From the NCBI RefSeq assembly GCF_032191835.1, contig NC_083237.1, positions 66,278,001 through 66,342,000 on the forward strand: a DNA stretch of 64,000 bases. Direction: 5' to 3'. The position numbers were made by a program, and so were the translations under genes. Positions within the stretch are counted from its first letter, which is position 1, and the number at the start of each line of letters is the position of its first letter. Positions 1,223 to 63,356 of this stretch are shown here, in pieces. The notes below the pieces were generated by a model, which ran no database searches, was not told the DNA's origin, and was given only the letters and a program-made list of their open reading frames with translations. This stretch comes from Heteronotia binoei (Eukaryota).

Positions 1223-1573
1223 AGAAGATGAAGATATTGGATTTATATCCCGCCCTCCACTCTGAAGAGTCTCAGAGCGGCTCACAATCTCCTTTCCCTT
1301 TCTCCCCGACAACAGACACCCTGTGAGGTGGGTGGGGCTGGAGAGGGCTCTCACAGCAGCTGCCCTTTCAAGGACAACCTCTGCCAGAGCTATGGCTGAC
1401 CCAAGGCCATGCTAGCAGGTGCAAGTGGAGGAGTGGGGGAATCAAACCCGGTTCTCCCAGATAAGAGAGCTCTGGCTGACCCAAGGCCATTCCAGCAGCT
1501 GCAAGTGGAGGAGTGGGGAATCAAACCCGGTTCTCCTGGATAAGAGTCCACACACTTAACCACTACACCAAAC
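1223..1573 (-). mobile_element. Squam3-like SINE with internal 79-bp duplication
   Basis: Head (gtttggtgtagtggttaag on minus), body and (TTC)n tail. The B-box segment is present twice, with junction ataagagagctctggctgaccc at 1461-1482. Confidence 0.85.
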
Positions 1574-1645
1574 AGTCCTCACAGCCGTGTTTCCTTTGAT
1601 CTTGCATGACAGATGAATTACCCTTTGCCCTCCACCAGATAAATC

Positions 1646-2223
1646 CAGGGATGTAGCCAGAAAATTTCGGGTGGAGGGGCCCAGGAGAGAAATGTTAAGG
1701 TGGTACGACCAGCAGCAGCCCGTATCTAGTGGCAGGGAGCTCCGCGGCCTCTACCGCTGCCCCACCATCGCCACCCCCCCCCCGCCCGGGACTCTCGCTG
1801 CTTGAGCTAGCGAGCTAGAAGGCAGGGAGGGGAGAGAGATGGCTTTTGGGGGCCCTGCAGGAAGAGGAGGAGGAGAAAGAAGATGCTCCTGAGCGGGAAC
1901 ACCCAGCAATGGAGGCATCAGGAGCCTCCCTCTCCCCACCCAAGCCAGCCATCCGGGGCCCCAGCAGCATAGCCAGCGGAGCTCCGCACCATCAGCAGGC
2001 AGGAATGGCAGTGGGGTGGGGGAAAGGCAGTGGATGGGAGGGAAGGCAGGAGGGAGGGAAGGAAGGAGACCCCCTCGTTCACCCGCCAGCTCGCCCTCAC
2101 CCTTGTCCAGGATGCTCCCTGGCCCCCATGCTCAATGGACTCCAATTGAAGGGGCCCAAAGGGTTAAGCAGGGGGTTGATTGAAGGGGTTCTCCTCCCCA
2201 GGCCCCCTGTAGCTACGGGCCTG
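1646..2223. mobile_element. hAT-type MITE
   Basis: Exact 8-bp TSD GATAAATC at 1638-1645 and 2224-2231. Ends CAGGGATGTAGC / GCTACGGGCCTG. Confidence 0.8.
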
Positions 2224-2343
2224 GATAAATCTACTTAACACTCTGCCATTCTTTCAGTGCCCTGATGTTCATGCACACATATTACAAAACAAAAACAAAC
2301 TGAGCATAGATAGGACCACTGTTTTATTTTAACTCCTCCTCAC

Positions 2344-61600: not shown

Positions 61601-62006
61601 CAGCACTGGGTGATGCTTCCAAGCGAGCACACTCTGTCAAAACCAAGCACACACAAACACACACACACACACACACACACACACACTAAACAGAGCCTGC
61701 CCTCCAAGAGAATGACTGGCCAGTTTGACTGGTATGAAAAGTTCAGGCAGGCCTTCAGTAGGCCTGATGACTGCCAGCCTGAACTCCACGATGCAGAGCG
61801 TGGCTCTCCTGCATTCGGAAAGGGCGAGGAAGACAGAGAAGCTGATTGTATGGATGTTTATTTATTAAAATCCAGCCAGGAATAACTCACCTGAGACCAC
61901 CCCAGAGATCACCTGGTGTGGAAAATGGGCAGCAAGGAAGACACGGGATAAACAGACACAAACCTGTACAGCCCAGAATCCTGCCCACAGGAGGCTGCGT
62001 AGACAC
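58621..62006 (-). CDS. G6PC1: Glucose-6-phosphatase catalytic subunit 1, last two exons (5' partial)
   Basis: Exon 62006-61891 (116 nt; [15 protein letters not shown] with the catalytic His) and exon 59132-58621 (512 nt; [23 protein letters not shown] with the dilysine ER signal). Motifs and synteny fit G6PC1; a tandem paralogue cannot be excluded. Confidence 0.88.
59731..60837. mobile_element. hAT-type non-autonomous element
   Basis: TIRs CAGGGGTGTCAAA / TTTGACACCCTTG. TSD agttagga/agttagaa (7/8). Contains a 35-bp tandem repeat at ~60598-60688. Confidence 0.8.
60842..61309 (-). mobile_element. Squam3-like SINE with both the 79-bp and the ~104-bp duplications
   Basis: Junction gtgaggtagatgaag at ~60951 and junction ataagagagctctggctg at 61189. 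Confidence 0.88.
61405..61510 (-). mobile_element. Penelope-like terminal repeat fragment
   Basis: Homologous to 52398-52530; hammerhead core degenerate (GAAC instead of GAAA). Confidence 0.55.
61644..61686. repeat. (CA)n microsatellite
   Basis: Directly visible. Confidence 0.95.
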
Positions 62007-62141
62007 CTGGTGGGGGAGGAGGGGGAGGATTTGTTCAAGCATTTGCACCACTCCACAATCAAAACCTGCCAGGCCTTCAGTGCCCAACCAGCACCATACC
62101 TGGCAGCTTTTAAAAAATGCAATACTTAAGCCGTCTCGAGT

Positions 62142-63356
62142 AGAAGAAGAAGATACTGGATTTATATCCCGCCCACCACTCTGAAGAGTCTCAGAGAGGC
62201 TCACAACTTCCTTTACCTTCCTCCCCCACAACAGACACCCTGTGAGGTAGATGAAGATATTGGATTTATATCCTGCCCTCCACTCCGAAGAGTCTCAGAG
62301 CGGCTCACAATCTCCTTTATCTTCCTCCCCCACAACAGACACCCTGTGAGGTAGATGAAGATATTGGATTTATATCCCGCCCTCCACTCCAAAGAGTCTC
62401 AGAGCGGCTCACAATCTCCTTTATCTTCCTCCCCCCACAACAGACACCCTGTGAGGTAGATGAAGATATTGGATTTATATCCCGCCCTCCACTCCGAAGA
62501 GTCTCAGAGCGGCTCACAATCTCCTTTGCCTTCCTTCCTCACAACAGACACCCTGTGAGGTAGATGAAGATATTGGATTTATATCCCGCCCTCCACTCCG
62601 AAGAGTCTCAGAGCGGCTCACAACCTCCTTTACCTTCCTCCCCCACAACAGACACCCTGTGAGGTAGATGAAGATATTGGATTTATATCCCACTCTCCAC
62701 TCCAAAGAGTCTCAGAGCGGCTCACAATCTCCTTTCCCTTCCTCCCCCACAACAGACACCCTGTGAGGTAGATGAAGATATTGGATTTATATCCCACTCT
62801 CCACTCCAAAGAGTCTCAGAGCGGCTCACAATCTCCTTTCCCTTCCTCCCCCACAACAGACACCCTGTGAGGTAGATGAAGATATTGGATTTATATCCCG
62901 CCCTCCACTCCGAAGAGTCTCAGAGCGGCTCACAATCTCCTTTCCCTTCCTCCCCTACAACAGACACCCTGTGAGATTGATGAAGATATTGGATTTATAT
63001 CCCGCCCTCCACTCCGAAGAGTCTCAGAGCGGCTCACAATCTCTTTTCCCTTCCTCCCCCACAACAGACACCCTGTGAGATCGATGACGATATTGGATTT
63101 ATATCCCGCCCTCCACTCCGAAGAGTCTGAGAGTGGCTCACAATCTCCTTTCCCTTCCTCCCCTACAACAGACACCCTGTGAGGTTGGTGGGGCTGGAGA
63201 AGGCTCTCACAGCAGCTGCCCTTTCAAGGACAACCTCTGCCAGAGCTATGGCTGACCCAAGGCCATGCTAGCAGGTGCAAGCGGAGGAGTGGGGAATCAA
63301 ACCCGGTTCTCCCAGATAAGAGTCCGCACACTTAACCACTACACCAAACTGGCTCT
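62142..63356 (-). repeat. Squam3-like SINE with 10 tandem copies of its 3' 104 bp
   Basis: Units start at ~62142, 62249, 62353, 62458, 62562, 62666, 62770, 62874, 62978, 63082, followed by a single body and head. Confidence 0.95.

What the first reader, a model, noticed from the sequence alone, without database searches (positions are those of the whole stretch)
1223..63356. Three unrelated retroposon families all turn into tandem arrays, with recurring identical junctions
Seen: Squam3-like copies amplify either a 79-bp internal unit (x2 at 1.4 kb, ~x16 at 19.3 kb, x2 at 61.2 kb) or a 104-bp 3' unit (x2 at 60.9 kb, x10 at 62.1 kb). Squam2-like copies amplify their head (x2, x4, x2, x5). CR1 copies amplify their last 67 bp (~x10, x6, x6, x4). 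Junction sequences recur at unlinked loci, so the initial duplications were probably made once and then dispersed. Inference: this lineage has mobile minisatellites, either from a reverse transcriptase prone to template slippage/re-initiation during TPRT, or from dimer-bearing masters that later expand by unequal exchange. From memory, SINE-derived satellites have been reported in squamates, so novelty must be checked; the extension to CR1 tails and to several families at once is the less familiar part.
Basis: partly seen in the sequence, partly recalled or inferred. Interest (0 to 1): 0.8.

Follow-up and report, generated by a model that had tools for sequence, protein, structure and literature searches.

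The report
Retroposon-derived minisatellites in a gecko genome
Pieces of two SINE families and the 3' tail of a CR1 LINE really are repeated head-to-tail at tens of thousands of places in this gecko genome; the SINE arrays are a published class, while the CR1-tail arrays and the way the break points sit at RNA ends look new.

Summary
Reversed-pattern controls gave 0.

The SINE part is already published as SINE-derived satellites sSat2 and sSat3 (Vassetzky et al. 2023), which are most abundant in Gekko. The window's 104-bp unit starts at the same boundary as their sSat3_Gja1a.

I found no paper on the 67-nt CR1 3' module (hairpin plus octamer tail) forming arrays. Other first readers of this scan noted such arrays at other loci of this genome.

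New here:
- Nine of 11 junction classes have an RNA end on one side, which argues for an origin during retrotransposition.
- 25 of 27 CR1 arrays keep the unique upstream 3'UTR, although the copies are truncated about 230 bp upstream. Long arrays were therefore not simply copied from array-bearing RNA.
- Units differ within an array almost as much as between arrays.
- Yet 40% of diverged units have an identical twin in their own array. This points to later block duplication in place, giving higher-order repeats.

The mechanism is inferred. No long reads, other species or RNA data were available.

The parts
1223..1580 (-). Squam3-like SINE with the 79-bp internal unit x2 (1388-1546). The first unit carries the junction-linked CCAGAGCT variant and the last carries CCATAGCT.
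19246..20830 (+). Squam3-like SINE with the 79-bp unit x16 (19272-20533), followed by a duplicated 3' part (20589-20820) that has a different junction.
46693..47395 (+). 5'-truncated Squam3-like element. It holds a 172-bp unit that runs from an internal point to the (CTT)n tail, repeated, and a 109-bp internal duplication.
49180..49630 (-). Squam3-like SINE whose first ~174 nt are repeated. The second unit restarts at consensus position 1 (GAGAGCCAG) after the filler ACAA.
60851..61305 (-). Squam3-like SINE carrying both the 104-bp 3' unit x2 (60851-61058) and the 79-bp unit x2 (61117-61273).
62145..63352 (-). Squam3-like SINE with the 104-bp 3'-terminal unit x10 (62145-63185). Junction: ATCTTCATCT|ACCTCACAG.
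9652..9990 (+). Squam2-like tRNA-derived SINE with head unit x2. It has the shared junction GAGAGCC-ATGAAT-GGGGCTGTGG.
27894..28500 (+). Squam2-like SINE with head unit x4 (132 bp) and a private junction, GAGAGC-A-GGGGAGGGATGG. Units 2-4 carry the full SINE 5' end, which the first unit lacks.
47990..48322 (-). Squam2-like SINE with head unit x2 and the shared ATGAAT junction.
53521..54488 (-). Squam2-like SINE with head unit x5 (a two-unit higher-order pattern), directly followed by a full-length second SINE. A candidate 5-bp duplication, CAAAG, brackets the whole composite.
5398..5822 (+). Two full-length Squam2-like SINEs joined tail to head (period 213, 90% alike).
32256..32835 (-). Three Squam2-like SINEs in a row. 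Two are joined directly, tail to head.
13454..14052 (+). Decayed CR1-tail array of about 8-10 units of 59-67 bp, some partial.
26440..27070 (+). 5'-truncated CR1 3' end (ORF2 C-terminus and 3'UTR) ending in 6 copies of the 67-bp module (26660-27064).
40690..41340 (+). 5'-truncated CR1 3' end with the long 3'UTR variant, ending in 6 copies of the module (40938-41340).
41929..42532 (-). CR1 3' end with a 98-aa ORF2 C-terminal reading frame (42236-42532), ending in 4 copies of the module (41929-42197).

Best explanation
These are retroposon-derived minisatellites made in two steps.

Step 1 (inferred from junction anatomy): the founding junctions arise during retrotransposition.
- The LINE reverse transcriptase leaves its template at an RNA end, or at the 5' edge of the 3' recognition module (hairpin plus octamer tail).
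- It then resumes on the 3' end or an inner site of the same or another RNA. A new copy primed in an existing tail would give the same product.
- This yields units bounded by the element's exact 3' end (CR1 67 and ~183 bp; Squam3 104 and 172 bp), units bounded by its exact 5' end (Squam2 132/134 bp; Squam3 174 bp), and whole SINEs joined tail to head.
- SINE copies that carry such a junction then act as source genes and spread the identical junction to 10^3-10^5 loci (shown by counts).
- CR1 tails gain several modules at or close to the time of insertion.

Step 2 (shown for sampled arrays): some arrays later grow in place.
- Blocks of already diverged units are duplicated, giving higher-order repeats.

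The SINE arrays belong to the published sSat2/sSat3 class. The CR1-tail arrays are the same kind of product from a LINE.
For: 1. All arrays and junctions are present, and genome-wide counts have zero reversed-pattern controls.

2. Nine of 11 junction classes seen here have an RNA terminus on one side.
- 3' end to internal: CR1-67, CR1-183, Squam3-104, Squam3-172 and the 20.6-kb variant.
- 3' end to 5' end: full SINE tandems.
- Internal to 5' end: Squam2-134, Squam2-132 and Squam3-174, with fillers ATGAAT, A and ACAA.
- Sources.

3. The private 132-bp array restarts with the full GGGGAGGGA 5' end, which is absent from that locus's first unit.

4. The Squam2 break point lies 2-3 nt from the start of its CR1-like module. 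The CR1 unit is that same module.

5. Each CR1 unit carries its own 1 or 2 octamers, giving 59- or 67-nt units.

6. 25 of 27 CR1 arrays keep the unique entry, although copies are truncated a median of ~230 bp upstream. The two orphan arrays start at or near a unit boundary.

7. Units differ within arrays almost as much as between arrays: 2.9-3.3 vs 3.7 of 67 nt, and 3.3 vs 3.7-4.0 of 79 nt.

8. Growth in place:
- 40% of diverged CR1 units have an identical twin in their own array, against 1% in controls.
- A 4-variant haplotype has only two genome hits, 7 units apart in one array.
- Periodic haplotype patterns are visible in the unit matrices.

9. Multi-variant unit haplotypes are shared by 2-6 loci with unrelated flanks.

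10. Precedent: R2 proteins make longer products by template jumping onto extra 3'UTR RNA molecules, and head-to-tail tandem insertions were seen in cells (PMC11371274).

11. The CR1 3' hairpin and octamer are the proposed RT recognition site, and CR1 reverse transcription has low processivity (PMC4316615).
Against: - No direct evidence exists for any RT event. Everything is read from junction anatomy.
- If modules were copied repeatedly from one RNA, the units should be identical at birth. Yet three non-CpG sites vary among units of the same array, near linkage equilibrium.
- Serial jumping over short RNAs should leave more orphan arrays than the 2 of 27 seen.
- Two junction classes (Squam3 79 bp and 109 bp) are internal on both sides.
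- The hairpin is predicted, but its folding energy is not better than shuffles (z = -0.84).
- Target-site duplications are short and ambiguous, and Squam3 is reported to have very few.
- All sampled loci outside the window come from the first 9 Mb of one chromosome and two small contigs. That region may be atypical.
- Array lengths could not be checked with long reads.
Confidence: 0.55

Rival explanations
1. Purely DNA-level origin, as proposed in the sSat paper. The first duplication of each kind arises by unequal homologous recombination or replication slippage between abundant SINE or LINE copies. Arrays then grow by unequal crossing-over with concerted evolution.
For: - Higher-order repeats and identical twin units occur within arrays.
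- Exact hits of the Squam2 junction on C1 cluster at both chromosome ends, where recombination is usually high.
- The published interpretation favours this.
Against: - DNA-level breaks have no reason to fall on the exact 5' or 3' end of the RNA, yet 9 of 11 junction classes do.
- Only 2-3 nt of microhomology flank the CR1 unit. That is too little for the same duplication to recur at ~10^5 loci.
- Within-array identity is hardly higher than between-array identity.
- Identical fillers such as ATGAAT at thousands of loci need common descent plus dispersal.
Confidence: 0.12
2. Mobile minisatellites in the strict sense. Source elements already carry long arrays. The RNA is copied with its array, and copy number changes mainly by RT slipping between repeats of the template.
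For: - Multi-variant unit haplotypes are shared by 2-6 loci with unrelated flanks, in all three families.
- Units within arrays are about as diverged as units between loci.
- SINE RNAs are seldom 5'-truncated, so this is plausible for the Squam2 and Squam3 arrays.
Against: - For CR1, copies stop a median of ~230 bp upstream of the array, while arrays are 0.3-2.6 kb. Most progeny should therefore be orphan arrays cut at random phases. Only 2 of 27 are orphans, and both start at or near a unit boundary.
- No two sampled arrays share the same order of unit variants.
Confidence: 0.2
3. Stepwise re-insertion. Each extra unit is a separate later retrotransposition event, primed in the octamer or simple-repeat tail of an older copy. 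Arrays therefore build up over time.
For: - Full-length SINEs joined tail to head are only 90-93% alike.
- Tail-to-head joints are frequent in short reads of another sample.
- Unit types within arrays look like independent draws from the family pool.
- Arrays start with an ordinary CR1 copy.
Against: - It needs every CR1 re-insertion to stop at the same nucleotide (units of 59 or 67 nt), with only TGT as microhomology.
- The mutation load per unit shows no spread beyond Poisson within arrays and no gradient along arrays.
- It cannot make the head-unit arrays or the 79-bp internal arrays.
Confidence: 0.1
4. Assembly artefact. The arrays are mis-assembled, with repeats expanded or collapsed.
For: No long reads could be laid on the window. 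Short reads gave about 1x unique depth and were swamped in the repeats.
Against: - Arrays are only 0.2-1.3 kb and lie inside unique flanks in a chromosome-scale assembly.
- Units within arrays differ at many positions in ordered patterns.
- The same classes are published from other squamate assemblies.
- Flanks at 27500-27875 and 28628-28900 are matched by reads of another sample.
Confidence: 0.03

Closest known systems
SINE-derived satellites sSat3 and sSat2 of squamates (Vassetzky, Kosushkin, Ryskov 2023, Mob DNA 14:21, PMC10702118)
   Same: - Tandem units are sub-parts of Squam3 or Squam2, with a longer terminal unit reaching the SINE end.
- Arrays run from a few to many units, are very abundant in a gecko, and show alternating sub-variants.
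- The window's 104-bp unit starts at the same ACCTCACAGGGTGTCTG boundary as sSat3_Gja1a and runs to the tail.
- The 132-137-bp Squam2 unit matches the description of sSat2Gja1: head plus a third of the body, 139 nt.
   Different: - The 79-bp internal Squam3 unit is not among the gecko variants aligned in their Supplementary file 4. It resembles the position of the snake 67-nt unit.
- The paper explains the origin by unequal homologous recombination. Its main text does not mention target sites, retrotransposition of junction-bearing copies or CR1.
- It states that no true dimeric Squam SINEs were found. Here one head-dimer junction has 5,543 copies.
CR1 LINE 3' end: conserved hairpin plus octamer microsatellite, proposed RT recognition site (Suh et al. 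2014, PMC4316615)
   Same: - The repeated 67-nt unit contains a predicted hairpin and ends in one or two TTCTTATG octamers.
- Copies are heavily 5'-truncated.
- A CR1-type ORF2 C-terminus lies upstream.
   Different: Normally only the octamer is reiterated. Here the whole module is reiterated 2 to more than 40 times, at about two thirds of sampled 3' ends (67-bp or ~183-bp units).
Serial template jumping by non-LTR reverse transcriptases (R2 protein in vitro and in cells, PMC11371274)
   Same: - Products are concatenated cDNAs of 3'UTR RNAs and head-to-tail tandem insertions.
- A few extra nucleotides sit at the joints.
   Different: - That work is biochemistry with a different LINE clade and supplied short RNAs.
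- Here the evidence is only genomic anatomy, and the donor point is often internal (the module edge) rather than the RNA 5' end.
Other transposon-derived tandem repeats: chicken HinfI and Cen satellites from CR1, cetacean satellite from the L1 3' end, Ogre 3'UTR repeats (reviews PMC9659126, PMC6947457)
   Same: Part of a retroelement, often its 3' untranslated end, becomes the unit of a tandem array.
   Different: Those are a few large satellite blocks. Here there are ~10^4-10^5 short dispersed arrays, each still attached to its parent element.

Membership tests
sSat3 (Squam3-derived satellite) | The unit is a sub-part of Squam3 and shorter than the SINE. | tested here: met
   The 79-bp and 104-bp units lie inside copies that align to the published Squam3B consensus.
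sSat3 (Squam3-derived satellite) | A terminal unit continues into the SINE up to its end. | tested here: met
   All window arrays are flanked by the SINE head and/or tail.
sSat3 (Squam3-derived satellite) | At least four middle monomers (the paper's working threshold). | tested here: met
   Met by 19272-20533 (x16) and 62145-63185 (x10). The x2 loci fall below the threshold.
sSat3 (Squam3-derived satellite) | Unit boundaries match a published gecko variant. | tested here: inconclusive
   The 104-bp unit shares the start of sSat3_Gja1a but differs in sequence. The 79-bp unit is absent from Supplementary file 4.
sSat2 (Squam2-derived satellite) | The unit covers the tRNA-derived head and the first part of the body (~139 nt). 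| tested here: met
   Units are 132-137 bp, running from the SINE 5' end to GAGAGC(C). Identity with the published Squam2 consensus was not checked by alignment.
CR1 LINE | 3' end with a hairpin followed by an octamer microsatellite. | tested here: met
   TTCTTATG occurs once or twice per unit. A 10-bp hairpin appears in the MFE and centroid folds, but its energy is not better than shuffles.
CR1 LINE | CR1-type ORF2 upstream of the 3'UTR. | tested here: inconclusive
   A 98-aa frame ends in ...[34 protein letters not shown].... Pfam gave no hit, and the Atlas gave only unnamed clusters. I recognise it as CR1-like from memory only.
CR1 LINE | Heavy 5' truncation of copies. | tested here: met
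   Shared sequence extends a median of ~230 bp upstream of the tail module.
Satellite evolving by unequal crossing-over (concerted evolution) | Units within an array are clearly more alike than units of different arrays. | tested here: not met
   Mean differences were 2.9-3.3 within vs 3.7 between (67 nt), and 3.3 vs 3.7-4.0 (79 nt).
Satellite evolving by unequal crossing-over (concerted evolution) | Higher-order repeats or recent local duplicates. | tested here: met
   Seen in L023, L024, L064, L066, L073, L039 and the 53.8-kb array. Twin units were 40% vs 1% in controls.
Dimeric SINE acting as a source gene | The same internal junction occurs at many unlinked loci, inside elements with normal SINE ends. 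| tested here: met
   5,543 and 70,090 junction copies. Three loci in the window have unrelated flanks.
Dimeric SINE acting as a source gene | Transcription of the multimer and new insertions from it. | not testable with these tools
   No RNA run holds this locus usefully.
Products of RT template jumping | Joints fall at template ends, often with a few extra nucleotides. | tested here: met
   Nine of 11 junction classes involve an RNA end. Fillers are ATGAAT, A and ACAA. Read joints carry 1-4 extra letters.
Products of RT template jumping | Direct demonstration that the partner RT jumps. | not testable with these tools
   This needs biochemistry or de novo insertion data.

The most novel reading that the evidence does not exclude
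The CR1 reverse transcriptase of this gecko lineage treats the 5' edge of its own 3' recognition module as a template boundary. At most insertions it copies the module several times before moving on, by telomerase-like reiteration or serial template jumping. It also jumps at SINE RNA ends. If so, about 10^5 dispersed minisatellites are a natural record of RT template jumping in vivo, and they supply the founders of the SINE-derived satellites.
Probability: 0.35. Interest if true: 0.75.

Novelty: new variant of a known kind. Interest (0 to 1): 0.5.

Why it matters
How dispersed repeats turn into tandem repeats is a long-standing question, and the published account of squamate SINE satellites leaves their origin and dispersal open. 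This genome offers tens of thousands of young, still-attached arrays from two SINEs and their LINE partner.

The break points sit at RNA ends or at the edge of the RT-recognition module. That makes a retrotransposition-coupled origin directly testable with long-read population data, sister-species comparisons and RNA data.

In practice, about 13 Mb of CR1-tail units and about 13 Mb of Squam3 units will affect repeat annotation, microsatellite and minisatellite marker design, and read mapping in this species.

Tried and rejected
- Reads. Neither search found a run holding half or more of the sampled words. Laying three short-read runs and one contig set on 27500-28900 gave about 1x depth on the flanks and thousands-fold pile-ups in the SINE. 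The private 132-bp junction and the array sizes could be neither confirmed nor refuted.
- CR1 identity by protein search. Pfam gave no hit and the Atlas gave only unnamed clusters.
- Hairpin thermodynamics. The fold was not better than shuffles.
- Age gradient along arrays, edge effect, and between-array differences in mutation load. None was significant.
- Comparison of unit types in first versus internal units. The apparent excess of variants in internal units (25 and 35 vs 6 and 17 per 100) disappears once higher-order duplicates are allowed for.
- Target-site duplications. Only 5-bp candidates were found by eye (AAGGG at 48.0-48.3 kb, CAAAG around 53.5-54.5 kb; read). That is too short to be decisive.
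- Literature searches for CR1-tail arrays in geckos or other reptiles found nothing specific. The library lacks most subscription journals and Repbase, so prior description cannot be excluded.
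Full report
OBSERVATION

Tandem Repeats Finder reports 35 rows in the window.

- Squam3-like SINE, 79-bp internal unit: x2 at 1388-1546 (-), x16 at 19272-20533 (+, 96% matches), x2 at 61117-61273 (-).
- Squam3-like SINE, 104-bp 3' unit: x2 at 60851-61058, x10 at 62145-63185.
- Squam2-like tRNA-derived SINE, head unit: x2 at 9652-9914, x4 at 27894-28417, x2 at 48059-48322, x5 at 53823-54488.
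- CR1 67-bp tail: 13454-14052 (decayed, about 8-10 units), x6 at 26660-27064, x6 at 40938-41340, x4 at 41929-42197.

- A duplicated Squam3 3' part at 20589-20820.
- A complex element at 46693-47395 with 172-bp and 109-bp units.
- A 174-bp Squam3 head duplication at 49180-49630.
- Full-length Squam2-like SINEs joined tail to head at 5398-5822, 32256-32835 and 53521-53944.

In this window, 6 of 8 Squam3-like copies and all 4 CR1 tails are tandemised. Only one Squam2-like copy (17452-17579) stands alone and undivided.

RECURRING JUNCTIONS

Within the window:
- The Squam2 head junction GAGAGCC-ATGAAT-GGGGCTGTGG is identical at 9.7, 48.1 and 53.8-54.5 kb. In all three the first head reads GGGACGGTGG and every later head reads GGGGCTGTGG.
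- The 79-bp junction always carries CCAGAGCT, whereas the last unit keeps the monomer's CCATAGCT.

Genome-wide, with up to 2 mismatches (G000, 2.63 Gb):

| Pattern | Matches |
|---|---|
| Squam2 head junction | 5,543 |
| Squam3 79-bp junction | 70,090 |
| Squam3 104-bp junction | 73,805 |
| Squam3 elements of this subfamily (marker) | 92,561 |
| CR1 unit-to-unit junction | 195,204 |
| CR1 entry from the unique 3'UTR into the first unit | 102,888 |

Every reversed-pattern control gave 0. The tool states that counts of large families are lower bounds.

In an entry-selected sample of 26 independent CR1 3' ends:
- About 8 had one module.
- 9 had 67-bp arrays of 3-24 units.
- 9 had arrays of a ~183-bp unit, with the junction TTCTTATG|TCTGGGGCAG.

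WHAT IS ALREADY KNOWN

Vassetzky, Kosushkin and Ryskov (2023, PMC10702118) described SINE-derived satellites sSat1, sSat2 and sSat3 in 56 squamate genomes.
- They found them most abundant and diverse in Gekko japonicus, with alternating sub-variants and a subtelomeric preference.
- Their Supplementary file 4 shows sSat3_Gja1a starting at ACCTCACAGGGTGTCTG and running to the tail. That is the same architecture as the 104-bp unit here, although the sequences differ.
- Their sSat2Gja1 (139 nt, head plus a third of the body) fits the Squam2 unit here.
- They attribute the origin to unequal homologous recombination and state that no true dimeric Squam SINEs were found.
- The main text does not mention target sites, retrotransposition of junction-bearing copies or CR1.

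An earlier follow-up in this scan (s1-321122) reached the same classification for a 79-bp array elsewhere in this genome.

The SINE half of the finding is therefore a known kind. The 79-bp unit may be a variant not listed for geckos.

THE CR1 TAIL

- Upstream of the arrays lies a CR1-type ORF2 C-terminus and 3'UTR. One example is the 98-aa frame at 42236-42532 (-).
- The unit holds a predicted hairpin (GGAUGGGCC/GGCCUGAUC in the MFE and centroid folds). It ends in one or two TTCTTATG octamers, which explains the 59- and 67-nt units.
- A conserved hairpin and octamer are the proposed CR1 RT recognition site, and CR1 copies are heavily truncated because of low processivity (PMC4316615).
- The last ~78 nt of the Squam2-like SINE align to exactly this module plus its entry. 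The score was 34, against a shuffle mean of 19 and a maximum of 32. The unit is therefore the piece a SINE needs to borrow.
- I found no paper describing arrays of this module. Known CR1-derived tandem repeats are large chicken satellites.
- Other first-stage readers noted such arrays at other places in this genome, without follow-up.

JUNCTION ANATOMY

Eleven junction classes were seen.
- Five join the element's exact 3' end, tail repeats included, to an internal point: CR1-67, CR1-183, Squam3-104, Squam3-172 and the 20.6-kb variant.
- One joins the 3' end to the 5' end: whole SINE tandems.
- Three join an internal point, through a short filler, to the SINE 5' end:
  - Squam2-134 with ATGAAT.
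  - The private Squam2-132 with A.
  - Squam3-174 with ACAA, restarting at consensus position 1.
- Two are internal on both sides: Squam3-79 with CTCT microhomology, and Squam3-109.

Further details:
- In the private 132-bp array, units 2-4 begin with the complete GGGGAGGGA 5' end, while the first unit of that locus begins GAGGGA after unrelated flank. The later units were therefore not copied from the first at the DNA level.
- The two independent Squam2 break points (GAGAGCC and GAGAGC) lie 2-3 nt before the CR1-like module.
- DNA-level duplication has no reason to find RNA ends. I take this as the strongest argument that the founding events happened during retrotransposition.
- Non-LTR reverse transcriptases do concatenate templates. 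R2 proteins jump from finished cDNA onto further 3'UTR RNA molecules, and head-to-tail tandem insertions were seen in cells (PMC11371274).

WERE LONG ARRAYS COPIED FROM RNA?

- In 27 CR1 arrays examined at their 5' side, 25 begin with the unique GCCACTG entry and upstream 3'UTR.
- The two orphan arrays (the second array of L073, and L083) start at or within 5 nt of a unit boundary.
- Yet the shared CR1 sequence upstream of the entry has a median length of only ~230 bp, and the arrays measure 0.3-2.6 kb.
- If such arrays sat at the 3' end of the template and truncation were random, most progeny would be orphan arrays cut at random phases.
- Long CR1 arrays were therefore made at or after insertion, not passively copied.

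WHEN DID THE UNITS ARISE?

- Mean differences between units of one array are close to those between arrays. For the CR1 unit they are 2.9-3.3 vs 3.7 of 67 nt, with no clear rise with distance. For the Squam3 unit they are 3.3 vs 3.7-4.0 of 79 nt.
- The mutation load per unique unit does not differ between arrays (F = 1.16, permutation p = 0.28) and is Poisson-like within arrays.
- Three non-CpG sites of the CR1 unit vary among units of the same array in 15-22 of 33 arrays, and all eight haplotypes occur near linkage equilibrium.
- First units and solo tails show the same variants: 6 and 17 per 100. The higher raw frequencies in internal units are explained by local duplicates.
- Many units thus look like independent draws made about when the family spread. 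This is unexplained (see the notebook). It could reflect several source variants, copying errors at hot spots, or exchange between loci.

GROWTH IN PLACE

- Unit-by-unit matrices show periodic, multi-variant haplotypes:
  - A 7-unit block in L023.
  - A 5-unit block in L024.
  - 67/59 alternation in L064.
  - 2-unit alternation in the 79-bp array L039.
  - 2-unit alternation in the window's 53.8-kb Squam2 array.
- The L023 4-variant haplotype has exactly two genome hits, 469 bp apart in that array.
- Among CR1 units with at least 2 differences from the majority sequence, 40% have an identical twin in their own array, against 1% in size-matched draws from other arrays.
- Short or old arrays (W40, W41, L014, L070, L074, L075) have no twins.

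SHARING BETWEEN LOCI

- The G33+G36 CR1 unit occurs in 6 loci with unrelated flanks and different upstream 3'UTR variants.
- The 4-variant Squam2 unit of the 53.8-kb array occurs once more, on C20.
- A 3-variant 79-bp unit of the 19.3-kb array occurs at three other chromosomes.
- Unit variants are therefore also inherited between loci. This fits junction-bearing, short-array source elements.

VERDICT

An RT-coupled origin of the junctions is inferred. Dispersal of junction-bearing copies is shown by counts and flanks. Local block duplication is shown in sampled arrays.
- The SINE arrays are a published class.
- The CR1-tail arrays, and the rule that break points sit at RNA ends or the module edge, are to my knowledge new variants of the known theme 'transposon part becomes tandem repeat'.

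Limits:
- No long reads were available.
- No other species could be compared.
- No RNA data held this locus usefully.
- All loci outside the window come from the first 9 Mb of contig C1 and two small contigs.
- I computed majority sequences only for the 67- and 79-nt units, to display variants.

Noticed in passing
genome contig C1 (listing): Exact copies of the Squam2 head junction on the 285.8-Mb contig C1 lie at 0.8-9.9 Mb (36), 180 Mb (1) and 279.7-285.5 Mb (33). This is a strong chromosome-end bias, in line with the subtelomeric preference reported for sSats. Only the first 100 exact hits are listed, so this is a lead.
   Followed up: no
window 5398-5822, 32256-32835, 53521-53944: Full-length Squam2-like SINEs are joined tail to head, with copies 90-93% alike. 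Short reads of another sample show many tail-to-head joints with 1-4 extra letters. This suggests either insertion into existing tails or end-to-end template jumps.
   Followed up: partly
loci L002, L009, L010, L020 (contig C1): A second, older CR1 3'UTR array type has a ~183-bp unit (long 3'UTR variant plus tail module) and the recurring junction TTCTTATG|TCTGGGGCAG.
   Followed up: partly
L083 (C1:8910700-8915000): A 40-unit CR1-tail array without the usual entry abuts an inverted array of the same unit, forming a palindrome.
   Followed up: no
window 11904-11966, 18080-18139, 48951-48993: The 22-bp repeat GACTTTGGGGGTGGAGCCAGGA occurs x2-3 at three places (once reverse-complemented). It probably belongs to another dispersed element.
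   Followed up: no
window 60598-60688: A perfect 35-bp repeat, x2.6 (TTTAAGCATGTTTGTATTTTACTGTATTGTGCAGT), lies just beside a Squam3 element.
   Followed up: no
CR1 67-nt unit, positions 25, 32, 48: Three non-CpG sites (T>G, T>C, T>G) are polymorphic among units in most arrays. All eight combinations occur near linkage equilibrium. The cause is unknown.
   Followed up: partly
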